Source of the DNA: Hydrolagus affinis
Taxonomy: Eukaryota
Assembly (NCBI GenBank): GCA_012026655.1
Contig: JAAILG010000114.1
Location: 1 to 64,000, forward strand
Reading direction: 5' to 3'
DNA: 64,000 nucleotides
The position numbers were made by a program, and so were the translations under genes. The notes beneath the pieces are model-generated. The model made no database searches. It was not told the origin of the DNA and saw only the letters and a list, made by a program, of their open reading frames with translations. The stretch's first letter is position 1, and the number at the start of each line of letters is the position of its first letter. Of the stretch, positions 14,201 through 63,373 are shown one piece after another.

Positions 14201-17200
14201 GCTTACCGAATGGCAAAGTGAGTGCCATTGTCTTTGAAAACGTTTAAACCGTTATATTAGTGGAAAACATAATAAGCTTTATGCTGGATTTTCTCAATAA
14301 AATTTCCCGCATTGAGGAAAGCTTGTACTTTGTAGTTGTACTTGTGTTTAATCATTTTGCCATTTGGACATTTTAAATCTCGAATTTTCCATCTGTGATT
14401 TCTTTTACAGAACATGAGTGATGCAATGGCCATACTACACAAACTGCAGACTGGACTGGATGTAAATGTCAAGTTTACCGGTGTAAGAGTTTTTGAGTAT
14501 ACTCCCGAGTGCATTGTATTTGATCTTCTCGATATTGCACTTTACCATGGATGGTTGGTGGATCCTCAGGTAAGGAATATAAAGAAGTCAAAGTTTTTTT
14601 TTCCCCCGCTTGTAAGAGAATTCTAAATCTGCAAGTTGCTTAACTCAGCTTTAAATTTTTGTGAGTTTCTTATTTCTATCCAAGCTTCCCTTCCCTTGGG
14701 CCTTCCACAGGTCTTTGTTTGGCTAGTTAGGTACTATTGTGAGAGGGATACAGGGCTCTGCATGACTGGCAACACTTTCTTTCTATAATTGGTCTCCAGT
14801 GTTATACAGTTAAAAATAGGGAAATATCCAAGGCTTTTTTTTCTCCCTGGGTTCCTTTTCCCTTCAATCCCATGGATGTAGCAAACCATCTTTGGCAAAG
14901 CTCTGAACCTTGCAGCTTTGTATTGATTGAATCACAGAGCATAAGACCAATGGTCAGGACTAGTTTGATTGACATCCAACTGACTGGAACACAAGCTGCT
15001 TGTTAAGAAAAAGCTGTGGAACTATGACGCACGAGTTTAGTAGTTTTATGGAGCCTATAAAAGTTTCACATTCTCTAAAAAGAACAGAGAATGCAGTTAC
15101 TGTATGTTTGTATATAAAAAAAGGTGCTAATGCTCTGGTACATTTAGACTGAAGAAAATTAATTTCAAGACCCATGGAAGTACTGCCAGTAAAATTAGAT
15201 GTGTTAGTCAGAATGAAGAGCCAGAAAAATGTGAGCATTTTCTAAAGAGCTGAACTGTTGGATAGAGACGAAAGTTCTTTTTAATGAAAATGTGGCCCTT
15301 TCTAAAATCTAAAAGGTGTGTAATGGGATATAGCGTATATTTATATGGCTTCTTGGACAGTTATGCCCCTGCCCCAACAACCATATAGTTCAAGGCTTTT
15401 GCCCCTTTATGTCTGAGGAGGCCGTCTAAGGCAAGGATAGCTAACTTTTGGCCCAGTGACATTCTACACATCTATTTAAGTTAGCCATCCCTGCATTTAA
15501 GTTAATTAAATAGTAGAGCTCCTTCCATGGTCAAAGTCTAAAAAATGCAGCATTTCAGCAAGGAAGTTTTAGAAGAAAAGTCAGATTCACAACATTTTCC
15601 TCACTGGTCGAATGAGTGATGTTGATATTGGGAGTTTCTCCCAGTGGGAGTTTAACCAGCGTTATCAAGACTGGGGCAGATAACTGCCGAATGGACTAAT
15701 GAAAGCACAGGAAGTTGGTTGGGTTGTGAGAAGGAAATTTCATGGAGAAGCTGAGAAAGAAAATTAAAGAATAATAACTTCTAAAAATGAAGTAATTATA
15801 TATAGACTTGAGGACTATCTGGGCCCACTGCTACCAGAGCTTTCCTTATTGTGATTACATTTTCTTTTTTTCTGCCACAAATAAAGTCAATTCGCTTTAC
15901 ACGATAGTGATTACAATTCGCTTTTCCTTATTGTGATTACATTTTCTTTTTTTCTGCCACAAATAAAGTCAATTCGCTTTACACGATATTCTGTGAAGCA
16001 CTTTGAGATGTCTAGAATACATGAAAAGCACTGTATCAAATGCAAGGATTTTTTTTTACACATAATGTTCTGTGGAGGTAGATGATGATATAATGCAACT
16101 GTAATTTGCATTATAGTTTTCACCCACAAAATGTACACACAGTCGCATCACTTTGCAGTATATCCTGTGAAGCGTTTTGCAACATCTTGACGATGTGTTT
16201 AGGCCCTATATCAAATGCAAGGATTATTTATTTCTGATGTTATGAAAGGTGTGATTAACTGGCACTCCATGCTCCCATTACAGTTTATTTAAAGCTGGTA
16301 CAACCTCTTAAGTACCAAAAATGTGACTTGTATGGTTCTCTTGCTATGTAAAAAGCCAAAGAATTCAGTTGAAGGTGTACTAGGTAGTCTGCTTGAAGTT
16401 GTGGATGATGCATTATCACGAATTATCAAACTGATCAGTGATGAGCAGCTGCAAAGTAAAGAGTGGAAATTGATTGCAATGAATTTGACTTAAACAGAAA
16501 AGGAGCCAGGTAGAATTTAGTTTCAACTCGCCACATTGCAGGCAATTCCACTTGTGAATCTGCAAAGAACTTTATTTTTAATTACAGGGTTACTTGTTTT
16601 GGAGAAAGTGTCTGATTGCTGTGAAACATTTTTGTGTAACATGGAAGGGTCTTGAAGCAAATTCACAAATTGTATCAAAAGGAATGTATGGGTCTAAAAG
16701 AAAGCCTCTTCGGAGTCTCAAATGTGATTTTCTGTTGATAATTCTATTCTGTAGAATGCTGATATAGCGAAGGCAGTGGGAATGTGCAGTTATAACCAGC
16801 TGGTGGAGAAGATTATCTCATGTAAACAGTCAGAGAACAGTGAACTAGTCAGTGAAGGTAAGGGAAGAACGGCTTTTTCTTTTTCTTCAAAAGCATTGGA
16901 TATTGGGGAAGAAAACTGCTGCATTGTACAGTATACTTGTCAAAGCAAGTGTTGTCCAGGATCTTTGAATGAATAGGTTTCTCGCTCTTCATGCACATAC
17001 TTAAACCACTGCACTATTTGAATAGATGGCTTTTTAAAAAAAAGTGAATCGATTATAGTAATGCACATAACAGAAGGATCAGTCAAGCCAAATTATAACT
17101 TAATGTAAATTGAAAGTTACTAACTTCATGGGAAGTATTAACTTTGCCCAGCTGCGTCATGGTAACATTGACGGAATCTGGGTGTAATTAGTGCCTGGCT

Positions 17201-30808: not shown

Positions 30809-33800
30809 CTACAGTGGGCAATGGAAAAAAATAGTAAGATACCAATAAATAATTCTATTCATGGTTGAAATTAAAGTTGCACCCAAGTCTTACAGAAAAT
30901 AGCAGTATACAATGAAGGGAATTCACCATAAGTAAACCAATCATGATCATAATTTGTCCCAATGCCAAATAATGTAACAAATTAGATAAAATCAATCCAT
31001 GTGGTGTGAAAGAATGGGTTACATATAATCCCACTTCCTTTGGTAAATGTTAAGTGGACAAAATACAGTAGCAAAAGATAAATGGAACTACATGGCATAT
31101 TGGGACACTATACTGTGTCATCCACCTTGGACAAACATTTGCTTTTCCTAATCTAAAATAGCACAAATGTGTTAGCAAATCACTGGGGTATAAATCAGTA
31201 TGTTGATCCAAGCTGCTCCCCAGTTCCAACTGACAAGATCTAGCACATGCAGAAAACGTGAAAAGCGCTATATCAAATGCAAGTATTATTATGTAAGATT
31301 TGCTCCATTGAGGTTTTTAGAAGATCAAATCCACATGATCTGCTTCAGTGATATGTCCAGTGCTGATGCCAAAGATCATACACATGGCAACAAAACGATC
31401 AATGGGAAAACAATCAAGCGATTGCCCTTGGAGAATTAATAAAGCTGGGCCTATCTCTCGTAAATTATAGCATCCTTCTGAAATTTCACGGTTTGATCTC
31501 AAAGGCACCAATACTTCCTGAAATAGACTTCCTGAAACTTCCAGAGTAAAGTAAGTTTAACACATCACGATTAAAAAAAAATCTGGCATAGGAATGCACT
31601 TAATGTAAGGAATCAAAGATTCTACTGAATGGGCAGATATATAGGAACCGCATTTCACCTACCCGCCCCAACTGATTAGCTTAGGTGTGTGTGAAGAACA
31701 AGCCAATACAAATATCGCCCCATCATTTAACCATTGTGAGGAAAGAGGTGAGTTATCACTGATTTGAACTTGACACCAATATAAACAAAGCTTATTGAAA
31801 AATGCACACCAAAAAAACTAAACCACTCAATATTCAGCATGATATAGGTTGAGTTGTTTTAATGCACTGCAAGTGAATTTTTCACACGTAGCAAAGAGAA
31901 ATCACAGAAACTTGGAAGTGATTTTGGCAACAGATACATTTATTAGTATCCTAACATTTCACTACATGGTTAATCAAATTTTGACTTTGCATGGTCATGT
32001 TGAATTTACATCATTTAATTAATTAACTATTGTTGGTATCACTGTTGGAGTAACAAAATGACCAAAAAACATTGAGAAGCAACCCAGTACACTCAAATAT
32101 GGTTCCAAAAGGCGCTCTTCTATGTTTATATAAAAAAAGTCCATCAAAAAGGTAGAGCCAACAGTCTTCTGTACTATTTACATTACAATTAATTCATGAA
32201 AGGTCATCAACAGCAACTGACAGAATTACTTTAGTACCTGGATGGCGGCATCATGCCAGGGCCACGATTGTCGCTCATTCGCCTCATGTCCTGATATCCA
32301 CTGCCTTGAGAACTAGGTCCAGAATGCCAACTGTTCCGTGGCGCTCCTGATTCACGCCCATGACGCTCTACTACTGGGTGCCTGCTATCATGATAGTGGG
32401 ATTGCTGGGAAAGAGGAGTTTGTGAATAATTAACCCTGGTACACACACCTCATTTGGAAATCAACAGATCAACTTCTGAAACTGATTTACAACTTAGTAG
32501 TAGTAATGCACTATATAATGACCAACTGAGCACACAAATAATTTATTTCATGCATTTCTCTTTTGTCGTGACACATAACCGTCTAAAATAATTATTCATA
32601 CAGGGTGATGATGTACAGCGCATGATCACTTAGTATTACATTAGTGCTTAAGAAAGATTCAAAATTATGTTGATGATTAACAAACTAGTGCAAAGTACCA
32701 CTAATGCTAAGGAACCGATCAAAGCTTCTCACTGATTTAAGCCCCTTGGGACATCCTGACGTGAAAGGCGCTACACAAGTGTAATTTTGTTGTTAACATT
32801 TACTGAACCGTACCCACCTGATTATTACTACCCCTCTCCATTACAGGCCGGCCTCCATCTCGGCTACTGTACCCAGACATGCTGCTGTGACCACTAGGTG
32901 GCCCACTTCTTATACTGTGTCCTGATCTCTCCGGTCGCATCCGATCTCGATCCCTCGAATTCCTGAAGTTAAAAAAGTTAACATTCAGAAACATTTCTTC
33001 ACTAAAAGCAGGGCAAAATAGTAATTAACCATCTTCAAATCCATTTTCCATGCTGCACATTATTTACAACTAAGGTCAATTAGATGACTTAAAAACAACC
33101 AAAAGAGGAATAATAAAGAGCAGAAAACAGCAGCCCACCCACTACATCTCAGCTTCCATTATTGTATAACAATGTTGGGACTTTGAGAAATGAAACTTCT
33201 AGGTGACTGTACGATGTGAAGGCATCAAATAGGCCATTGCATTCTGCGGTATCAACTAGGCATCATATTTCCCTCCCAAAAATCCGGCAATTGCTAGTGT
33301 TATAAAATAAAACTTAAAAACATCCAGCAACAAAATTGAACAACCAGAAAAGAATCACTTGAGGGAATTTGCCTACATTCAATTATATTCACATTAAATA
33401 TGGAGTTGCGTATAGGTTGTGTATTTAGCTGAGAACCTGCACGGGTTTCGAGATTGGAATGATCAGGTTACCTAATCTCAAAAATGCTAATCCCAAAGAA
33501 TCACAAATTCCTGTGATCAAAAAGATGTTAATTTGTGATGATTAAAATTAACCCTCCCACCCTCACCCCCACAGCAACAAATCCAACACTTGAATTCACA
33601 GATCACAAGGATTTTATTGGAACAAGTTCCACAATACCTTATTTCACGTTTGGAAGAACCCATACCACTCGGCTTCCATTCATTTGGTCTGGAAGAATTG
33701 TGACTTGGCCGGCCGTGCTGGACTCCATGGTCACTCATCCGGCCCCGGTCAGGAAAGCTCCTTGATGGGGAAATCTTCGGGAGGTGGTCATGGCCCCTGC

Positions 33801-36800
33801 TCCCACTTGATCGGTCCTGAAGAGTCACAGTTCGCCGTTCGTCTCGGTCTCTCATTTCCCTCCGTTCATTATTTCCATGGAGCTCAATTCTTTGTTGAGA
33901 AGATGGTCGTCGAGAATCACCATAGGGTTTGGGGTACCTATTGTACCCAGAGTCCTCCCTGCGGCTCCCAGAGCGAGTCTTCTTTCCTTCTCCTTGATGG
34001 TTGTAACGATCTCCTCGTCTGATTTAATTAATAGGATGACACAGTTAGTTTCATGAAACAGGTCTAGTAAATGGTTAGATTTTACAGCAAATGCCATCAC
34101 AGGAGATCAAAGGGATATCTAGAGGGAAATTGAGCTACCTACTCTTATTGCTAACTGCGTGAAAGCCAGCTGAGTTAGTTGACCTTTTTTGGGACGTCCT
34201 CCAGACGTGAAAGGCAATATACAAATGTAATTTTGTTGTTTTCCCATGGAATCACATTCATTGTTAAAAAGATCAGAAATCTAACACACAGAAACAAGAT
34301 AGGAACTCTGGTCCTAAAACTGATATGTCACTTAGGTAGCTTTTTTTTTAGCATTATTCTCAATGGATGAAATGTATAAATGTGCATCAAGACTATTTGC
34401 GATGTGTAATTACCATTTCCTTTCTGTTCTAATTTCATAATTCTCAGTGAACAATAAGAGGGATAAACTGAATAAGAGAGATAAACTCACTGAAGTGCAG
34501 TAACATCCAGACAACAGCTATCATTAGCCACTTACCCATCAAAAGATGAAGATTGAACTCTATGGTCAAAGTCATTGAAACGGTTTGGATCCTGGCGACT
34601 GTAATCAGAATTGTGGCTAAAGCGGGCATCACTGTCCATGGTCCTCCTCTTATGTTCATTCCAATAAGGTTCATCACGTCTAAACAGAGTACATTAGAAG
34701 CCCGTTTATCCGTGACTCGATGAACCGGCACTTCCGTATAACCGGCACGCCTCAAAAAAATTCCCCATTCAATAAACTGGAACTTATCCATAATAATAGC
34801 AGTGGAGCATTTGTAAATGCATAAATAACAGATAATAACAGAATATTGTATTGGTACTTATTGTTAAAACTACTCTCTTGCGCTTCTCACCTTTCCTGGT
34901 AGATGTTGCGCTTGAAGCCATGATGCTGCACTTGAGGTTTATAGTCCAGTGATTCTTTTTAAAATGGAGGACGCCAAGCGGGTGAAAAAAACGTCAGCGT
35001 GACTTTAAAGCCTTACTAGCGGCAAGCCGATAACTCACATTGTCGCGCAGGTGCAGCATTTCGGTTTGCCACTAGTAGAGTCCAGGGTTATCGGCTTGCC
35101 ACTAATAAGGCTTTAAAGTCGCACTGCAGTTTTTTTCACCTGCTTGGCGTCCTCCATTTAAAAAAGAATCGCCGGAATGCAAACCTCAACCCTTAAAAGG
35201 TGAGAAGCGCAAGAGAGTAGTTTTAACAATAAGTACCAATACAATATTCTGTTATTATCTGTTATTATTTAGTCTGGTGTATATGGTGTGTGTTAAAAGA
35301 ACTTTAATTTTTTTGCGGTGGGTTTTTGGCCGCGGGTCGCACGAATATCCGGCAGGCGCTTTAACCGGCATTGGCCAGGTCCCGCGGGTGCTGTATAAAC
35401 TGGCTTTTACTGTATTTAGAAGCCAGTTCACTAAAGGAACCATTCTTACCTTTAAATACTGTACAAAATTAATTCTACTAACAGTAACTAATTAAGCTTT
35501 AGGTTTTCATAAATTAATATCTATAGATGGCCATGCAGTGATACTGTTTTCTATTCCACAATTTATACAAGTGGTGAGGTGCACTTTCACACCTTCAGGA
35601 ATTCTAAGGATCGAGATCGGATGCGACTGGAAAGATCAGGACACACTGTAAGAAGTGGGCCATATTCCTTATTTCAGCTGATATAATCAAGACTATAAGC
35701 CTCTTTGTAACAAGTGCAAAATATAAGTCCTCAAAGAAAATTCACTTGTTTTTAATATCACCTATGCCCCTCCAATGCAAAAAATAAATTGGTTATTTGT
35801 TACAACAGTTTGTGGGACACTGCTATGCGCAATTGGCTGCACCGTTTCACTCACAAATATAGTCAATTCACTTTACAGAATATTCTGTGCAGCACTTTGA
35901 GACGTCTAGAATATGTGAAAAGTGCTATATCAAATGCAAGATTATTATTATGTACAGTATATGTTTTTAGAAAAGTTTACCCTTCGTCACTACATCTAGA
36001 AGCCCATAAGTTGATTCCAAAACTTCTTTCTACATGTTAGAACAACACTGGAAACACAACTATTCATCCCTCCTTGATCTAACTTACCTATCTTTTCTGG
36101 TTCTAACTAACTTATCTCTCCTTGCTAACTTTCTTTTTTCTTTGGGATAAATACCCTTTTTCTCAACAAAGCAAAAATTGGGAAGTTTTGCACAGCAAGT
36201 GAGAAAAAACCTCAGGTGCTGCCTATCTACAGGACATCATGTTGGGACTCAAACAGATTACATCAATCTCATGTCAAATACACGTTACATCAATAATTTA
36301 TGTATCAAATTTTGGAGTGAATGACTGCGAACATATTTTAATTAAAAAGGGCAAGTAAACAAGTATTGCACAAGTACTTTCATCAATCTCAGCTTGTATT
36401 CTTCAGCATAACATTACTTACGTATCCTAACACTCCACACAGATGGCACACTGGAGCGGAAACATGCTGTGCCACCATTCTGCCCAGCACAAATGAATTC
36501 CCTGAACTCTACAGGAAATGATTAATCACTTTCAGGCCTGTAATTCCCCTCCAAAAATACCTGTTATCTACATCACGTGGTCGTTTTAATGAATTTCTTC
36601 TTTCTTGTTCATAACGGAGCTGCTCCTGTTGCCGACGGAGTTCTTCTCGTTCGCGGGCTATGCGCTCGATCTCCTTTCGCCTCTCCTACAATACAGGGAT
36701 ATCAGTTTGATATTGACTCATCTTTCTACTGCAGACCTTTCACCCGATGAAACAAAGCGCATACCTCAACGTACACTGAGAAATAATGAAGCATAATGTT

Positions 36801-39800
36801 CCACAGTATCGTAATCTAGGGATACCAGCTAACACGTAGGAAAATGCCCATGATCGCCCGCCAAAAATCGCTCTCTGAGACACCACTCCAACCAGAGACC
36901 AACCAATTGTAAATCTGCGACCAGAGTCCCCTTGCTAAATACAAGCAGGAACAAACTGCACCCAAGAATGTTTCCGAATAATGGAATCTGCATTAAAAAA
37001 TCTTCACCTGTTCTATACGGATACGTTCCCTTTCGAGTCGTTCCCTCTCCATTCTTTCCCTTTCGAGCTTCTGCTTCTCAATTTCCAACCTTTCCCTTTC
37101 TCGCTGCAGGCGGTCGCGCTCTTCTCGCTCACGCAAGATGCGAATACGATCCCGCTCACGACGCTGTCTTTCAGCTATTTCCCGCCGCCTAAATAAAATA
37201 CAGAGAAACATTAGAAAAATGCAGAGTATAAACATTTGCCACAGCAGCCAACCTTAAACCAAGCTTACTGGGGAATTAAGCATGCATATTGCATAGTATG
37301 CTCGCGTCCACTAGCCTGGTAATTACTGAACAGCTCGTGATGTATAAGATAATCTAAAAATATCAAGTTCAGTACCGATACAGACAGGGTAGTTATAAGA
37401 AACTAATACAAACGAGTATTGCTCACCCCGTAGAATTTAAAATGAACACAATCCCGAGGGAGGATAAGCATTGCATTTTACCTCAACCTAAGTGACAAAC
37501 CCCATACCTTCTTAATTCAATCGCACGTCGTATACGTTGCAATCGAACTAAGCGTTCCCGAATCTTTTGTTGTTTTATCTTCTCAAATGGTAAAATATCT
37601 TTTCTCTCTTTACTGCTTGGTTTACTCGGAATAGGTTTTTCTTTGCTTTTTGAAGTGGACACCTGCAAAATAAAATGAAGGACTAGAACAATTCTCCATG
37701 TTATGCCTCTCCTCCTTTGCTATTAAGGCTAGGGAGTCAGTCCTATAATCACTAATGATTTGGTTTCACTTTTGTTTGGAGACAGTGTTCATGGTGTATG
37801 TAATTAACATGCCCTTTTCCAATTTAGTAGCTTTAACCCATCTGATATCGCCATTTTAGGAAAGCTAAAATACAAATGTCAAGACAAGGTTAAGAATCAA
37901 ACCTCTTCCGCAACTCGACAAGCTGCACAAATTAACATTTTAAAGAGCTACTCTGTCACAAGATCTCAACACCAAACTTCTAATCAGGCTTTCCTTCAAA
38001 AATCACAATCAGCCATGGGTGGGTTGACATTTAACAGAACACATGCAGATCAAGTACAATTGGTTTAAGTTTCAAATCCGAAATGCAACCTGAACTTTTA
38101 ATTTTTTTTCTTTTACGAAAAATAAATGGTGCAAGATTAAAAGTGTGTTATGAGGCTATGAATTGGTTGACAAATAAACAAAATTTTTCTCCTGGATGCT
38201 CACCGGCTCACTCTTGCCTTTCTTGACAGTTTTCACACTGACCACAGGTTCCCCCTTAGCTTTGTCAATAACTACCATACGGTGAGGACTCTTCACACCT
38301 GGGGAGCAAAATAAAACATCAGAAAAATCTAATTTGCTGGTGGTAAAATAGTGGCAATCATTCCTTTATTGACCAAATCATACAATAAAATCCAAGTGCA
38401 TACTTCTTCGCCTTTTATCATCTGCTTTTTTGGAATGGTCATGATTGCTGCATGTATTTTCCTTTTCATCCCTCTTTTCTTGTTTCTTCATAGAATTTGA
38501 CCCATCCTTGCTTTCTTTTTTATCTCCAAGCTTTTCGGTTTTCTTATCTTCCTTTTTGGACGACACCTGGATCCTTATATTGATAAGGGAGTTTAAAGAA
38601 ACAATAAATGCTGTAACTCTGGATCAGAATTAAAAGGCTAACTCGGTTTAACATGTTTCTATATTATAATCATGGTACAAGTGATGGTACACTTATGATC
38701 ATTAATTATCTTAAAAAACCTAACTGTCACAAAGAATAATCTGGTCAATAAAATTGTCACTGACACGAGATTCTGCTGATGGATGCATTCTCGGAACAAT
38801 TATTGACGCCTGCAAAAATGTACTATTCTTTATACCAAACTTCATTTTTGCTATCATCACTTCCTATCATCCCTAACATTCAATGATTCTGCACAGACGG
38901 CATTTGAACAAGAACAAGTACAAAGTGGAGCAAAATTCAAGTAGCCTTTAGAGCACAAGCATTGGTTTTAATGTGGACATTTTTCTTGTGCACATTTTAA
39001 TTGTACATTATCTCCAATGGACCAGTACATGCATGCCAAGCTCAGAATTGCTTTTTGGGGGATTCATAGATATTTAGTTACTAGCATTAATACAGAGTTG
39101 GAAATGTTGGCTTGCAGTATGAGAACTCCTGCAGATAGTTTTCAAGGGCGTTTGTGTTAACCACCACTTTACCATGACATGTACAAAGATGTTATTGACA
39201 CAGGTACAGTCTGCTTTATTTGAAAAGAAGATTATGCTCTTTGAGACAAATAACTGAGCAGCAGCTTCACTGAATAGCTTGAACAACTGGCCTTTACTAT
39301 TGCATCTTGCACAAGCCAGGGTCCATGAACTTCATAACCGAGGAAGTCACTTGAAATTGGCACAGTTCAAGGAATTATCCAGATATTTCATCTACACCCA
39401 GTGTTTATAAACATTTATACCTTAACCCAGCATTTACTTACTTGCTGCTGGTTTTCCCACTGCTCGAAGACTTCTTATCACTCCCATTTCTACTCGAACT
39501 CATCTTCCCGCTGCCATCTTTTGTTGAGCAGTCTTTTTTAAAAGGGTCACTTTTCACCTTAAAGACAATTTGGAATTTGTCAAAGGCAAAACAATGATTT
39601 GATAAAACTAGACGTAAGGAATGATCCAACATGGAATCTTTTGTTCTGACATTTAAATTCAAAAAGCGTTCCTGTATATAGATGTGTTTTCTTTATGTAG
39701 ATGTGTACTAATTGGAACATATGCGTTTCCCCACAAATATAGTCAATTTTCCTACTCTTCTTCATCCTGCCCCGATCCCTCCCCATCTGCTCTTGTCCCT

Positions 39801-42800
39801 CCCTAACTGTACTGCGCCTTTGGACATCCTCTTGATGTGAAAGGCGCTATATAAATGTAAGGATTGATTGATTGATTTGGGATCAATCTCAGATAGTGGG
39901 GTCAATTCAAGAGATACATTTGTCCCCCTTGAATGTACCTGGATTTATTACAATTATTTTGGATAGTGACAGCCATAATACCAAGATATTGGACCAGGAG
40001 TAAGAATCAAGAGCATTTGACAGTCAGTTAGTCAGCGCAATAGTGTCTTTTTAATAATAATGCTTGCATTTGATATAGCGCCTTATCACATCTTCAAGAC
40101 GTCTTAAAGCGCTTCACAGAATATACTGTAAAGTGACTTGACTGTGCACTTTTAATACAAATGACCCAACCCTAAGCAGCCAATTTTACACACCATTGTC
40201 CCACAGTCATGGATTGCGTGACCAATTTATAATTTATTTCAAAGGAATCCCTGGAAAAGCAATCCACCAATCGACTAACAACGAGTTCCTACTTACTATT
40301 AGGTAAACCCGAGGTGTGTGGAGTAAGGAAACTTGCCTAACATGTATATTACCATTGCAAATAGCATTGAGGTGGGGAGTGGAGGGTCTACTTTTGCTAT
40401 ATTTGATGTAATCAGCAGAATTCCATCGAGGTTTTTTCCATTTGAAGTCTTGTGCAAATGAATTGCAGGTTATTAGCAGTTAGGCCCTCCTTATAATGTT
40501 AAGCATATTTAAAATGGACTATTCTATATGGCAAATGTGTATTATTTACTTTCTCAACAGAAATCTGCTGCCCATGCAGCTCTGTGCGATGCAGGTGGGA
40601 AATACACCTCGACACCTCTGTACTTGAAGACATTGTCACAAATCCATAGCATCGAGCACCAGGACTGCGAGCGTTGGTCACTACCTTTGCACTCAGAACC
40701 TAGGGGCAAAAGAATAAAATTCAGCATGAAACATCATTACCAGCATCTTCATTAACGTCAATCTGACACCGGGAAGGAATATAGCATGTAGTATTAAACT
40801 GTCATACCTTTCCATATTTACTGAACAGGTTCTTTAGATCAGCTGCTTTAGTGTTGGAAGATAGACCACTAATCCACAGGTTCTTGGTTGAGCTGCTACT
40901 GCTGCCACTGGTGCTCCCAGAACTGCTGCTAACACCTCCTATAACAGAAGTGAAAATAAAACCATTGACATGACTATACACCCTATGGAATATTTCACTC
41001 AGCTGTTATATAACTTATCTGAATATTGCATAACAATAACATTACATAACTTCATCAGATATTGTAGTACAGCAGAGACACATATGACAGTCACCCTACT
41101 AATGCGGTTAGGATTTTTTGCAGCTTTTTTCACTTGAAGATTACATAGTAGCCATACACACTACTGAGGTCAATCCGTTACTGTAGTCAAAATTATTCAG
41201 TTTGTTTGGTGACCTTATTTGTGAATTTCCTCTGTACTGACATGAACTTTGAATGTAAAATGATAACAAAAATTCAATACAACAAGAAATCAATTATTGA
41301 GTCACCTTTTTCATCCTTGGTAGCAGCCTTATCTTTGGAGTCCTTACTTGAACTATGAACACAAAGGAATATTAGAAGCTGCACACAAACCAAAGTACTC
41401 AAGAACAATAAGTGGAACTAATCCTTTAGACAAAATACTGCTGTACCGATTTATAAAGTAATGCATTAAAAAAACATCAAACCAAGCATATTGGTTAAAA
41501 TATAAAGAACCTAAAGAATCTCTAGTCACAAATATACAGAAGCCAACGAGGCCTACATTTGAACAAAATGGTTCCAAAATGGACTCTTGCATCGATATTC
41601 CAAAGCTGCCTGAAGGTCAAGATTTGTGCCAATTCTATTCAGTGAGCAAATCACAATCTTCTCCAGTAATCAGGAGTGGTAGTTTGGTTTCCATACTTGA
41701 GAATTCTCCTTACTTGGCTTCATTGTGATTTTTTCATATGGCGTGCTGATTGTTCAGGATCAACACAAAAGTTATTTAAAAAATAATGTATTTTTTTTTT
41801 AAAAAACTTCTAATTGTCAAAAAAGGATATAAAAGCAAAAACCGAAGTGTGTAGAAGAAAAAATAGGCAACGATAAACGCAAGCTCTCAATATTGCACCA
41901 GTCTTTTTTTTAAAAAACTCACCGTCTTTCAAAATAAAAACATACAATGTTAAGCTTCTTAAAAAAGGATTACCACATACACTGGCTTGTTAGGTATCAG
42001 ATTATAGAGCTGTGAATACTCACAAATGCAGACTGATCTTACTGTTGATACTCGGTATGAGAAATTGACATAGAAAAACAAACCTCTTTGCTTGACTGGA
42101 TGCCCCAGCTGATGAGGGGCCTTTCTTTGAAGAATCTCTCTCTTTATCTCCACCTTCAGCTTTTCTAGATCCTTCTCTGGCTTCCTTCTTCGACTCGGCT
42201 TTCATCCCCTCCTCTTTTCTTCCTTCCTTATGGTTTTTCTCTTTCTTTCCCTCATTTTTGACTTCTCCCTCTCCGTGCTCCTGGGACTGGGGCTCCTTTT
42301 CAGCTTTGGGTTTATTCACCTCACAATCTGGTGTTTTCGGGTTTTTACCTGTTTCCAAAAGGTCATCCCCATCGAAGTCCAATGTGATGGCATCTTCTGC
42401 TTGGATTGTGACCGAAATGTTATCGTCATCCGCTTCTTTCAAAGACGCACTGGGTGCAGTTTCATCTTGAATAGTTTGGTGAGCCTCAGCGAGGCCTTCC
42501 TCTGAAGGTAGAGTTTTTGACACTTCACGAGAACCGTCATCTATATCATCTACATCTGAGAGATTTAACAGGAATAAACATGGCAAAAATACAGGTTTAA
42601 AAGTCAAAACTTTTACCTAGATGGTGACCTTATCATTGATATTCAAAAAAAATAACAATTTACCTAAACTCAGAAGGTTAGAAAACTATAAGGTGCAGCA
42701 TGTGAATCTGACTTCCTCAATGACAGTTGTTATGTGCAATACCTTTGGGTTACAAAGTCTTCTGTGGCAGCACAAAGATCATTACAGAGGCATTATTCTT

Positions 42801-45800: not shown

Positions 45801-48800
45801 CTACATCTGTATGTCATCCTGACGTGAAAGGCACTATTCAAATGTAACTTTGGTGCGTCGTTATTGTAGTACTGTAGGTGGAGATTTCCTGGCTATGCAT
45901 TCATTTCATTGTGTGATGAGATTTCTATCCTCACCTTTAATCGGGTCAACTCTAATTAAGATCATATCCCCTCATTCGGAATTTGTCTACCATGCAGAAG
46001 AGTCCTTTGCCCCATCTAACTTGTCAACTCGATCCTTCATCTTAAATACTACAATTAAATCACCCTCAACCAACTATAACCCAGTCATAATCTCTCATCG
46101 TAAAATACTCCTGATCTCACATATAGCTCTGGTGAATCATTACCAGAATTTCCTCATTGCCACAATTCAAAAAGAGATGATTGTCCTGTTGTCCTAGCGC
46201 ACAATCCCTCTGATAACATTGATTATTATTATTAATTATTTTTGATGATTTGGAAACAAATCCCCACAATTCTTCTTCGTCTATTTTCAGTAATTCCTAC
46301 CACCCTTTTAAAGCGTGGCTAAAAATCTAATTTATGGCCTTTTTTCCCCTCCCTTAAGCCTGATACTGAATGCATCATACCATGATCACTATTCCAAAGA
46401 TGCTCCCTTACTTTCAAAATTTCTATTTCCATCCTTGTTTCTCATAATTAAATAATAACATTATTTTCTCCTGTGTTTTTAGCTGTTTAGAAAACAATGC
46501 TGAACGAATTCACAATTTCTACTTTCTTTTCTACTGCTGCTAAGTCGCCGTCCAGTGTGGAGGACACTATATAAATCGAAGTTGTTGTTATTATTGCCCT
46601 CTTATATATGAAAATTAAAATCTTTAATTATTACCACATTTGTGTTCTTGCAGACTTGTCTGATTTGTGTATAATGCATTTCTCCGTCAGTTCTACAAAA
46701 ATACTCCAGTGTGCTACACTCTTTCGATACACCTATAAGAATTCCACCTGCTGATTGCTCTCTTTACATTCCTCTTTTCAACTGTCATGCTGTTGTCATA
46801 ATAAGGTAGTGACCAGATGTCACTGATGCACAATAGTCTGTCAAGGCAACTGAAAATATACATACTGTATTTTCACATAGGTATCTGAATTGTTTTCCCA
46901 CAAGTCAAGACACATCCATAGCTTATGCAGGCTATAGCTAAATTTCAACAGTTGTCCTGTAAATGGTTCTCTACCCAGATCAGTATTTATCTTCAACCAG
47001 TTGACTCCATATTCTGCTTGCATAATCAAAAGACTAATACTCCAGAACAAATGTACCACTCAATCACTTGTTTCTACGGTTTTAATCAGATTGTTACCAA
47101 AGTCCCTCAAAAGCAATAAATTTAAATTTCTAATCTTTTAAGTGTATTTCACATTAGAACAACATAATTTAGAGAGCAACAGAAGACCCATTAACTTTCT
47201 ACACCAATATAATGTCAACATTGGAGTTGATGAGGCAATAAGATGCTTAGCAGGTAATTTGCCAGACACCACCAGGCAGCATTTTACAAGTTTAGGAGAT
47301 ACCTTTTTACCAAAAAAAAGGAAAAATAATTTGTATTTATATATATATACCCTGAGGCAGGGTAACATCCCAAAGTGGTAGATGTTTTTCATTCTAAAAT
47401 GTATCACAAATGTTATTGTTTCAGAAGGATTTCACAAGAAAATTGAAGAACACTTTCTCTTCTCGGCTCTCCTGTATTCCACAGAGTGAAGTGTGATTAT
47501 ATATGAAATGAAATGATTGAACAGGTGAATAGAACAAATTCACCAAAAACAGTACAGCATTTTTTACAGAAAGTAAAGATCCCTTTTGCGTTTCCTATGT
47601 TTAGTAGGAATCTTGAGTGCTTTAACTATTACGCAACACCTTTCAGAAGACCAAAAAACATCAGAATGTCACTGAGAATCATAGGCTCATTTGGCAGGCA
47701 AACATATTCAATTAATAACTAAAGTACAATTAATTATGTGATCAAAACATCTCTGGCTAAGTATCCACTTTGATGTTTTCTCTCCAGAACTAAAGGTATA
47801 CATTCACCTAGATCCTCATACAATTTCATGAATTGTCACTGAAATTTCTCCAAGGTTTATGAACTGGGACTCCTAAATCCCCTTGTTCACAATCTCTCCT
47901 CAGTACATTCCCATTTTCACATCCAAAAAGTACCGCTTTAGTTTTTAAGAGCCCACTGGACAGTTAAAACACAAAAATCTGACTGAGCGACGTCTAGAAT
48001 CCAGTTTAGATAATCAGATAATCTGTTGTGATGAAATAGTTATGTGATGGACATGCAATTAAGTTAAATCAATTTAAGAGCTGGAATGCTTCCTATTGAT
48101 TTATGAAAACCAGACATTTTTGTACCTGGCCTTCAGGATCCAAATCCTCAGAAATTTTTACTTCAGATGCATGTTGACTTGAACTCTTAGGCAACTGTTC
48201 ACTGACTGAATCACAATTTTTATCCACCTTTTCCTCAGCTTCAGTGGTCTTCTGATCGTCTGCTCCATCTTGATCACTTGTATCCTGAGAATCACTCTGG
48301 ATTGCATCTATATCAGTTTCCATCTATTACAAGACACTATTATTTACACTTCTAAATATAATATAGAAGTCAAGGAATGTATACGTTTAACTGAGTGTTT
48401 GAAAAGAAAATCTGGGGTTTATTCCTTTTAAAACCAGAAAGGCGTTTGCCGCACAGTTCAGGAATACAACAGGAAGGCTTGTGAAATGTAATCATTTTAA
48501 GCAGGATTAAAAAGTTCTACCTCACTGCCTATGTACAACAATCACATTTAATGAATTTTAAAATTGAAGAGTTGGTTCTACTATTACAAAACTGTAGGTG
48601 ATACATTAGAACTGAGTCAACCAAAGCAATGCAATTAAACAAGTAACAGAGAAGAGAGGAAATAAACAGATTTAAGGACCTATCCAGTATATTATTTTTC
48701 AACTGACAGTTTCAAACACAGTTTTTCTTAGCTGAGTTATTGATGTACCTTCTTACCACTTTCATTCTCACAGTATCCACCACCTGATTAAGAAATGCAT

Positions 48801-62300: not shown

Positions 62301-62465
62301 ATATATTTGTGCTTGAAATAGAGGAGCGATCTCTGGATGAGTTGCTCACATTATTTGAATCCCCCTATTTTCAGTCATTTCAAGAATGATAGGATCTTGA
62401 GATTGGTGCCTTTTCTATTTTTGTGTGTGTGTGTGTTTTCATCACGTTTGAGTTGAAAGGGATAC

Positions 62466-63373
62466 TGAAATCAGTGAGCATCATGTTTGAGCTTGTTTTG
62501 TCAACTTGGATAAATAAAAATAATCCTTGCATTTAGTATTTCGCCTCATGCTCTTATCCAGCACAGACTAGTTTGGTCCAATAGCTTGTTTCTGTGCTGA
62601 CATTCTGTAATTATGTCATTGAAATATCTCAAACCTCTTGTACAATTTTTCTTTAAAGTGTAGTGACTAAAGTGTAGCTGATTGTAAGTCTTATCAAATG
62701 CTTCAACAGTCTTTAATATCTGGATCCTAGAGTCTTTGTTGCTGCCCAAAATTGTTCAAATTTCTCTCTCTTCCCCCTCGCGTGATTCTTCGTCTTATCT
62801 CATGAAGTCAAAAACTCTTACTGGTGGTAAGGGTCTTCAGGTAGTGGTGTGAGGATGGTCAGTGAATAGTGGTGACATTTAAACGCAGACCAAGTGTTAG
62901 AGCGACCAAGACTGAAAGGAGAAGGTGTTGAAGAATGATTACAGGGCAAGATCGGTTCTCTACTCTACCTCTACTTCCTCTCCCACACATGGGAACATTA
63001 AAGCCAATTGAGACCAGTGAATCCAATTCTTATCTGCATGTTTCAGTGCACCACATGGTCAATTTACTAAGTATCTTCACTTTTTTCAGAACCATAAATT
63101 TTTAAACATTATGGAGATTTCAGAATATAAGGTACCGGTTTTGTTTAGCCAGTTATTGACATTATTTTCAAGACCTGTGACTGCTGGTTTCAGTGGTCTG
63201 CTTCAGTTTCAACAGCTGCCATGAAGGTTGGATCGTCAATTGTGGTAGAGTGTTGAAAATGTGATGGGTTCAGTTGTATCATCGGGTTCACAATGTTTCA
63301 ACCTCAGGCACTAATGCTTGCTTTTGCTTATTGAAATCAGTGAGCATTCATGTTTGAGCTTGTTTTGTCAACT
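62466..63373 (+). repeat. Pair of 41/42-bp direct repeats 866 bp apart
   Basis: TGAAATCAGTGAGCA(T)TCATGTTTGAGCTTGTTTTGTCAACT at 62466-62506 and 63332-63373. Confidence 0.8.

What the first reader, a model, noticed from the sequence alone, without database searches (positions are those of the whole stretch)
32899..35662. Antisense copy of SLTM exon 18 in its own intron 15: a built-in RNA duplex over a splice acceptor and a candidate A-to-I recoding site
Seen: 35593-35662 (+) matches the sense sequence of the exon-18 acceptor (CTTCAG|G) and the first 64 exonic nt at 64/70. In the minus-strand pre-mRNA the intronic copy is therefore complementary to the exon about 2.6 kb downstream. Of the six differences, two become G:U pairs and one places the first A of ATA (Ile, position 32913) opposite C, the mismatch ADAR is known to favour; editing would give Ile>Val. 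The duplex would also cover the 3' splice site and loop out exons 16-17 (525 nt, frame-preserving). Inference: a self-antisense element born from local inverted exon duplication, acting as an editing-complementary sequence or splice switch.
Basis: partly seen in the sequence, partly recalled or inferred. Interest (0 to 1): 0.8.

Follow-up and report, generated by a model that had tools for sequence, protein, structure and literature searches.

The report
Inverted exon-fragment copy in SLTM intron
A 70-base backwards copy of the start of one SLTM exon sits in an upstream intron of the same gene in a chimaera-like fish; it could pair with the exon in the unspliced RNA, but the gene looks normally spliced, so it is most likely a harmless repair scar.

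Summary
Plus-strand 35593-35662 is the reverse complement of 32899-32968 at 64 of 70 bases. These are the only two copies in the window.

The gene is SLTM on the minus strand. Its exon peptides are 98-100% identical to Callorhinchus milii.

The predicted duplex is strong: -128.5 kcal/mol against -35 for shuffles. It persists in a 2961-nt fold.

No function is shown:
- An RNA contig of a related species joins exons 16-17-18 normally.
- Poly(A) RNA shows even depth over exons 17-19 and none in intron 17.
- 11 of 11 C. milii isoforms keep these exons.
- No editing row at 32913 appeared among the 40 of 366 rows shown.
- All four amino-acid changes lie in the copy, and the share of pair-keeping changes is what neutral decay predicts.

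Verdict: a real, short inverted templated duplication, probably inert. An effect on editing or circle formation is not excluded.

The parts
35593..35662 (+). Inverted copy of 6 nt of intron 17 (CTTCAG) plus the first 64 nt of exon 18. It lies in the intron between the exons at 36687-36561 and 34679-34536 and is antisense to the gene.
   Evidence: 64 of 70 identity to the reverse complement of 32899-32968. tblastn with C. milii SLTM also hits 35597-35668 on the plus strand at 79% over 24 aa.
35583..35592 (+). Doubtful 10-nt extension of the copy (6 of 10 match).
   Evidence: the repeat finder extension; sequences read.
32899..32968 (-). Source segment: 3' splice site of intron 17 (32968-32963) and the first 64 nt of exon 18 (32962-32899). 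Includes Ile codon ATA at 32913-32911.
   Evidence: The RNA contig X15 record 2 places the splice junction at about 32961/32962.
32818..32962 (-). Exon 18 (145 nt).
   Evidence: Splice signals read; X15 record 2; 100% peptide identity to C. milii SLTM.
33638..34018 (-). Exon 17 (381 nt).
34536..34679 (-). Exon 16 (144 nt).
34680..36560 (-). The copy lies 898 nt after the donor and 903 nt before the exon-16 acceptor.
   Evidence: X15 record 5 and X21 depth mark the upstream exon at 36561-36687.

Best explanation
A short (about 70 nt) inverted duplication of genomic DNA from the intron-17/exon-18 boundary of SLTM was inserted 2.6 kb away, into single-copy sequence in the middle of the intron that precedes exon 16. 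The most likely cause is a repair or replication template switch, that is, a templated insertion (inferred). Since then the copy has drifted: six substitutions, all apparently on the copy's side. In the pre-mRNA the two segments can in principle form a 70-bp imperfect duplex over the exon-18 acceptor. In practice the gene is spliced canonically. A likely reason is that the upstream intron carrying the antisense arm can be removed before or soon after exon 18 is transcribed (inferred). The element is therefore best read as a tolerated, essentially inert duplication scar. At most it gives low-level, non-adaptive side effects such as some editing or a rare exon 16-17 circle.
For: The repeat is real, has only two copies, and has abrupt ends. 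Its flanks are single-copy: DNA read depth in bins 35439-35800 is 12-55, against 10^5-10^6 in the neighbouring repeat bins. No repeat-family match starts before 35780. Polarity: the copy reads K, L, T, V where the exon reads R, P, S, I. All 14 chondrichthyan orthologs compared keep R and P, and none has V at the Ile position, so the changes are in the copy. Four of the six changes alter the amino acid, as expected for unconstrained DNA. Only 2 of 6 changes keep a standard pair. Under neutral substitution the chance of 2 or more of 6 doing so is 0.26-0.65, depending on transition bias, so there is no sign of selection for pairing. Splicing: the RNA contig X15 record 2 joins 34536-34681, 33637-34018 and 32824-32961. 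In poly(A) RNA run X21, depth per exonic base is about 27-30 for exon 17, about 35 for exon 18 and about 28-30 for exon 19 (my arithmetic from the bin means). The three bins 33086-33628 inside intron 17 have depth 0. 11 of 11 C. milii SLTM isoforms carry the six exons from 37190 to 32238 contiguously. Published background: inverted templated insertions near their template are a known germline mutation class (PMC8421209, passages read). In human genes, conserved complementary regions are depleted around active splice sites (PMC8052449, passages read).
Against: The duplex is very stable in silico (-128.5 kcal/mol; 64 in-register pairs survive in the 2961-nt minimum-energy fold). Some molecular consequence is therefore plausible. 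The read tables were truncated: 40 of 366 difference rows and 15 of 386 joints were shown, and all joints shown are repeat artefacts. Low-level editing, skipping or back-splicing would not have been seen. X21 is a poly(A) single-cell library of a sample about 1% different from the window. For that organism, presence of the copy rests on one DNA contig that reaches only 20-30 nt into it. No clear junction microhomology supports the template-switch origin. The template lies 2.6 kb away, farther than the 100 bp searched in the cited study. Whether the copy is conserved in other species is unknown.
Confidence: 0.65

Rival explanations
1. The intronic copy acts as an editing complementary sequence. 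The exon-intron duplex recruits ADAR before intron removal and edits exon 18, above all the A at 32913 (Ile to Val). It may also edit other adenosines, including the acceptor AG.
For: The intron arm is complementary to the exon and predicted to pair. Of 22 adenosines on the exon arm, 32913 is the only one opposite C. It is also one of only two with a 5' U, while 12 have the disfavoured 5' G (the neighbour preferences are recalled knowledge, not tested here). Editing sites are enriched in long-range complementary regions of human pre-mRNAs, more so in stable ones (PMC8052449, passages). Intronic complementary sequences for coding sites are well known (PMC8897444, passages).
Against: No T>C row at 32913 or elsewhere in 32899-32968 is among the 40 of 366 rows shown for a run with roughly 35-fold exon-18 depth, although rows were hidden. 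The A.C mismatch arose by a substitution in the copy, like five other apparently random changes. Val is found at this position in none of the 14 chondrichthyan orthologs. A near-perfect 70-bp duplex would be expected to be edited promiscuously rather than at one site (recalled knowledge). The arm is 2.6 kb upstream in an intron that can be spliced out first.
Confidence: 0.12
2. The pair acts on splicing topology. It brings the exon-16 acceptor and the exon-17 donor together and so promotes a 525-nt circular RNA of exons 16-17. Alternatively it masks the exon-18 acceptor and lowers exon 18 inclusion, which shifts the frame by 145 nt, in some cells.
For: Geometry: one arm lies 903 nt upstream of exon 16 and the other begins about 660 nt downstream of exon 17. 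Inverted repeats of about 30-40 nt flanking exons are sufficient for circularisation in expression plasmids (PMC4201285, abstract in the search listing). [quoted passage not shown]
Against: Linear splicing 16-17-18 is what is seen. Depth is even across exons 17-19, with no intron-17 signal in poly(A) RNA. No C. milii isoform lacks these exons (0 of 11). No back-splice joint is among the 15 joints shown, though 371 were hidden and poly(A) libraries under-sample circles. A stronger hairpin (34824-35266) and other repeats in the same intron compete for folding.
Confidence: 0.15
3. The copy is an assembly artefact, such as a chimeric read or fold-back.
For: No listed contig of the independent DNA runs spans the whole copy. 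X6 record 20 ends 20 nt into it, short of the tool's own 31-letter rule for bridging.
Against: The copy differs from its source at 6 of 70 positions, which a fold-back artefact would not produce. Both DNA runs have single-copy depth in the two bins that hold it (X5 12.3 and 44.5; X6 55.2 and 21.5). X6 record 20 carries the left junction with only 3 differences in 249 nt.
Confidence: 0.03

Closest known systems
Inverted templated insertions from template switching (MMBIR-type, or polymerase-theta end joining)
   Same: A short insertion that is an inverted copy of a nearby template on the same chromosome. Such events are known as germline variants (PMC8421209, passages read).
   Different: The template is 2.6 kb away, whereas that study searched within 100 bp. 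No clear junction microhomology survives: the base next to the core mismatches on both sides. At 70 nt it is at the long end of such events.
Editing complementary sequences of ADAR recoding sites (for example the GRIA2 Q/R site; recalled)
   Same: An intronic sequence complementary to a coding exon, with an A opposite C at a candidate site.
   Different: The arm is upstream and 2.6 kb away, across two exons and three introns. No editing is shown, no conservation is shown, and the duplex is long and nearly perfect rather than a site-selective imperfect stem.
Long-range complementary regions in pre-mRNA and inverted repeats flanking circRNA exons (PMC8052449; PMC4201285)
   Same: Two complementary segments kilobases apart in one pre-mRNA, bracketing exons. 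The length is well above the 30-40 nt reported as sufficient for circularisation.
   Different: One arm covers an active constitutive acceptor and coding sequence, a placement that the human catalogue finds depleted. The arms come from an exon duplication, not from transposon pairs. No junction evidence.

Membership tests
ADAR editing complementary sequence | Intronic segment base-pairs with the edited exon | tested here: met
   In silico only: -128.5 kcal/mol against -35 +/- 5 for 500 shuffles; 64 in-register pairs in the 2961-nt minimum-energy fold.
ADAR editing complementary sequence | A-to-G difference between RNA and DNA at the site | tested here: inconclusive
   No row at 32913 among the 40 of 366 difference rows shown; exon-18 depth about 35 in X21. 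Hidden rows and lack of matched DNA prevent a verdict.
ADAR editing complementary sequence | Conservation of the complementary arm across species | not testable with these tools
A metagenome scan gave only 8 chance bacterial 20-25 nt matches.
circRNA-promoting flanking inverted repeats | Complementary arms on both sides of the circularised exons | tested here: met
   Arms lie at 35593-35662 (upstream of exon 16) and 32899-32968 (downstream of exon 17).
circRNA-promoting flanking inverted repeats | Back-splice junction reads (exon 17 donor to exon 16 acceptor) | tested here: inconclusive
   None among the 15 of 386 joints shown; all shown are repeat artefacts; the library is poly(A).
Templated inverted insertion | The insert is an inverted copy of a nearby template | tested here: met
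Templated inverted insertion | Microhomology at the junctions | tested here: inconclusive
   The base next to the core mismatches on both sides. A 5-nt match lies 5 nt off the left junction. After about 9% decay this is uninformative.
Transposon-carried exon fragment | The copy lies inside a repeated element with family members elsewhere | tested here: not met
   Flanks 35440-35592 and 35663-35779 have no other match in the window and show single-copy read depth.
SLTM (SAFB-like transcription modulator) gene | Exon peptides match named SLTM proteins | tested here: met
   Exon 17 alone finds a 1056-aa protein at E 6e-52, named SLTM by its source. Exon peptides are 98-100% identical to C. milii SLTM. 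The neighbouring gene was noted by the scan as RNF111 (unchecked).

The most novel reading that the evidence does not exclude
This is a newborn, lineage-specific self-antisense element. A repair accident copied a live splice acceptor and coding sequence backwards into an upstream intron. That instantly created a 70-bp intramolecular dsRNA, which now gives measurable ADAR editing of SLTM exon 18 (including Ile to Val at 32913) and/or a 525-nt exon 16-17 circular RNA. If so, it would be a natural snapshot of how editing complementary sequences or circRNA-promoting repeats arise from the exon itself rather than from transposons.
Probability: 0.15. Interest if true: 0.7.

Novelty: new member of a known kind. 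Interest (0 to 1): 0.3.

Why it matters
If the duplex had a molecular effect, it would be a dated example of an exon-complementary intronic arm arising in one step by inverted duplication of the exon. The origin of such arms is rarely documented. My two full-text searches for this idea found nothing specific: one search gave 2 papers and one search gave 1, none on the point. As it stands, the element shows that a gene can carry a very stable predicted duplex over a constitutive splice acceptor without visible harm. That is a caution against inferring function from complementarity alone.

Tried and rejected
Presence of the copy in relatives is therefore untested.

Metagenome scan with the 20-mer shared by both arms: 8 loci, all GC-rich (57-70%) contigs that match for only 20-25 nt. 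These are chance hits and I rejected them.

Transposon origin: rejected. The flanks are unique and read depth is single-copy.

Processed-mRNA (retrocopy) origin: rejected. The copy carries the intronic CTTCAG and not the end of exon 17.

Exon derived from the intronic element: rejected. The exon peptide is conserved across 14 chondrichthyans and is recognisable in bony vertebrates.

Known structured RNA or tRNA in 32000-37400: none (Rfam at E <= 0.1; ARAGORN).

Antisense transcription over the copy: X21 has 0 reads with the first mate on the minus strand in bins 35439-35800.

Selection for pairing: not detectable.

Earlier findings of the scan: nothing on this element.

Supplementary files of the papers were not opened. 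The catalogues in the supplements of PMC8052449 and PMC8897444 concern human genes and would not change the verdict.

Exon 17 was searched alone. Exon peptides were compared one by one. Full-length comparisons used public proteins returned by the tools.
Full report
**What is in the sequence**

The plus-strand segment 35593-35662 is the reverse complement of 32899-32968 at 64 of 70 positions, without gaps (blastn). The repeat finder reports the pair as 80-nt arms at 88%. The ten extra bases match at only 6 of 10, and the five next to the core match at 1 of 5, so the duplicated unit is about 70 nt.

A whole-window self-comparison finds exactly these two copies. A 20-mer shared by the two arms occurs twice at up to 3 mismatches, against 0 expected in 100 shuffles. 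The match is far beyond chance.

**The gene**

The exon 17 peptide, searched on its own, finds a 1056-aa protein at E 6e-52. Its source names it SAFB-like transcription modulator. 902 relatives carry the SAP and RRM Pfam domains expected of this family.

The window's exon peptides are 98.4% (exon 17) and 100% (exon 18) identical to Callorhinchus milii SLTM, and 60-85% identical to sharks and rays. The window therefore comes from a holocephalan close to, but not identical with, C. milii.

tblastn with a C. milii isoform places the whole coding region on the minus strand, from 50903 to 30673.

**Exon map around the finding (minus strand)**

| Exon | Coordinates | Length |
|---|---|---|
| upstream exon | 37190-37007 | |
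| upstream exon | 36687-36561 | |
| exon 16 | 34679-34536 | 144 nt |
| exon 17 | 34018-33638 | 381 nt |
| exon 18 | 32962-32818 | 145 nt |
| exon 19 | 32404-32238 | |

The map rests on splice signals read and on a spliced RNA contig.

- The host intron is 36560-34680 (1881 nt). The copy lies in its middle, 898 nt from the donor and 903 nt from the exon-16 acceptor.
- The acceptor CTTCAG is at 32968-32963, and the Ile codon ATA is at 32913-32911.
- In the pre-mRNA the six differences become G.A, G:U, C.A, G:U, G.G and A.C, the last at 32913.

Every factual detail of the finding is correct. Only the exon numbers remain unverified.

**Origin**

- The copy includes six intronic bases, so it was copied from genomic DNA or unspliced RNA, not from mRNA.
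- The exon is the source. Its peptide is conserved in all 14 chondrichthyan orthologs compared. The copy reads K, L, T, V where the exon reads R, P, S, I. All 14 orthologs keep R and P, and none has V.
- The flanks of the copy (35440-35592 and 35663-35779) match nothing else in the window. They have single-copy read depth, whereas the neighbouring repeat bins reach 10^5-10^6. No transposon carried the copy.
- The ends of the homology are abrupt.

This is the signature of a short inverted templated insertion, a mutation class known from template switching during break repair (PMC8421209, passages read). Two points weaken that assignment: the template is farther away than in that study, and no junction microhomology is recognisable.

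**Age**

The estimate is rough. The copy has 6 of 70 changes on one lineage. The RNA contigs of organism E differ from the window at 46 of 1147 exonic bases (summed, table 8), mostly at silent sites, because the proteins are 98-100% identical if organism E is C. milii (my guess). The copy may therefore be about as old as that species split. I cannot say on which side of the split it arose.

**Can it pair?**

In silico, yes. RNAduplex gives -128.5 kcal/mol for the 80-nt arms, against -35 +/- 5 for 500 shuffles. In the minimum-energy fold of a 2961-nt stretch of pre-mRNA, 64 in-register pairs form. The duplex covers the acceptor AG and 64 nt of exon 18. It does not cover the polypyrimidine tract or the branch region.

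**Does it do anything?**

1. X15 record 2 (669 nt) is spliced 34536-34681 | 33637-34018 | 32824-32961. This is canonical 16-17-18 splicing.
2. In X21, my arithmetic from the bin means gives about 27-30 reads per exonic base for exon 17, about 35 for exon 18 and about 28-30 for exon 19. The three bins inside intron 17 (33086-33628) have depth 0. There is no visible skipping or retention.
3. No difference row at 32913, or anywhere in the exon arm, appears among the 40 rows shown. 326 rows were hidden, so low-level editing is not excluded.
4. All 15 joints shown are repeat artefacts. 371 were hidden, so rare skipping or back-splicing is not excluded either.
5. DNA support for the copy is partial. 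X6 record 20 covers 35364-35612 with 3 differences, reaching 20 nt into the core. That is short of the tool's 31-letter bridging rule. Both DNA runs have single-copy depth in the two bins that hold the copy.

Separately, 11 of 11 C. milii isoforms in the protein collection carry the six exons from 37190 to 32238 contiguously; their length variation lies upstream. Whether C. milii has the copy is unknown.

**Signs of selection**

None were found. Two of the six changes keep a standard pair. For random single substitutions on this arm, the chance that 2 or more of 6 do so is 0.26, 0.47 or 0.65, for transition weights of 1, 2 or 4. Four of the six changes alter the encoded amino acid in the copy.

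The A.C mismatch at 32913 arose by a change in the copy. Of 22 adenosines on the exon arm, 12 have a 5' G. Only 32913 and 32911 have a 5' U, and only 32913 faces C.

**Comparison with known systems**

Long-range complementary regions in pre-mRNAs are a described class. [quoted passage not shown] Inverted repeats of 30-40 nt suffice for circularisation in plasmids (PMC4201285, abstract in the listing). Intronic complementary sequences for coding editing sites are standard (PMC8897444, passages).

The present pair fits the geometry of all three. Its placement is unusual, because one arm covers an active constitutive acceptor. It meets none of the functional criteria with the data available. Promotion of an exon 16-17 circle is the more coherent topological prediction.

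**Verdict**

The functional interpretation is unsupported but not refuted.

| Reading | Probability |
|---|---|
| Tolerated, inert templated-insertion scar | 0.65 |
| Circle formation or splice modulation | 0.15 |
| Functional editing arm | 0.12 |
| Assembly artefact | 0.03 |

The decisive tests are presence or absence in other chondrichthyan genomes and matched RNA/DNA reads.

Noticed in passing
window 34824-35266: Nested palindrome in the same intron: outer arms 34824-34894 / 35196-35266 are 71 nt and 100% complementary; inner arms 34932-35034 / 35087-35189 are 103 nt at 87%. Read depth there is 10^5-10^6 in the DNA runs, so it belongs to a very high-copy fold-back (MITE-like) family. All 168 pairs from one side go to the other in the minimum-energy fold. 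It is a stronger pre-mRNA hairpin than the finding itself.
   Followed up: partly
window 35780-35957, 32740-32794, 34189-34240: SINE-like repeat fragments with many copies in the window (about 20 hits for 35780-35957) and huge read depth. One lies 118 nt from the copy but is not contiguous with it.
   Followed up: partly
window 35258-35438: Another very high-copy repeat (depth about 10^6 in X5), next to the palindrome and ending about 150 nt before the copy.
   Followed up: no
window 15841-15906 and 15923-15988: Perfect 66-nt direct repeat, 17 nt apart, low copy in the window.
   Followed up: no
window 62463-62506 and 63329-63373: 45-nt direct repeat at 95.6%, 823 nt apart, low copy.
   Followed up: no
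window 48117-48323, 40541-40939 and 38198-38575: tblastn blocks of C. milii SLTM with low identity or long gaps (45%, 71%, 68%). They probably hold alternative or split exons. All length variation among the 11 C. milii isoforms lies upstream of the exon at 37190.
   Followed up: no
window 30673-50903: The whole SLTM coding region fits in about 20 kb on the minus strand. The exon peptides are 98-100% identical to Callorhinchus milii, so the genome is a holocephalan's. DNA runs labelled organism A and organism B both differ from the window by about 1%.
   Followed up: partly
   Followed up: no
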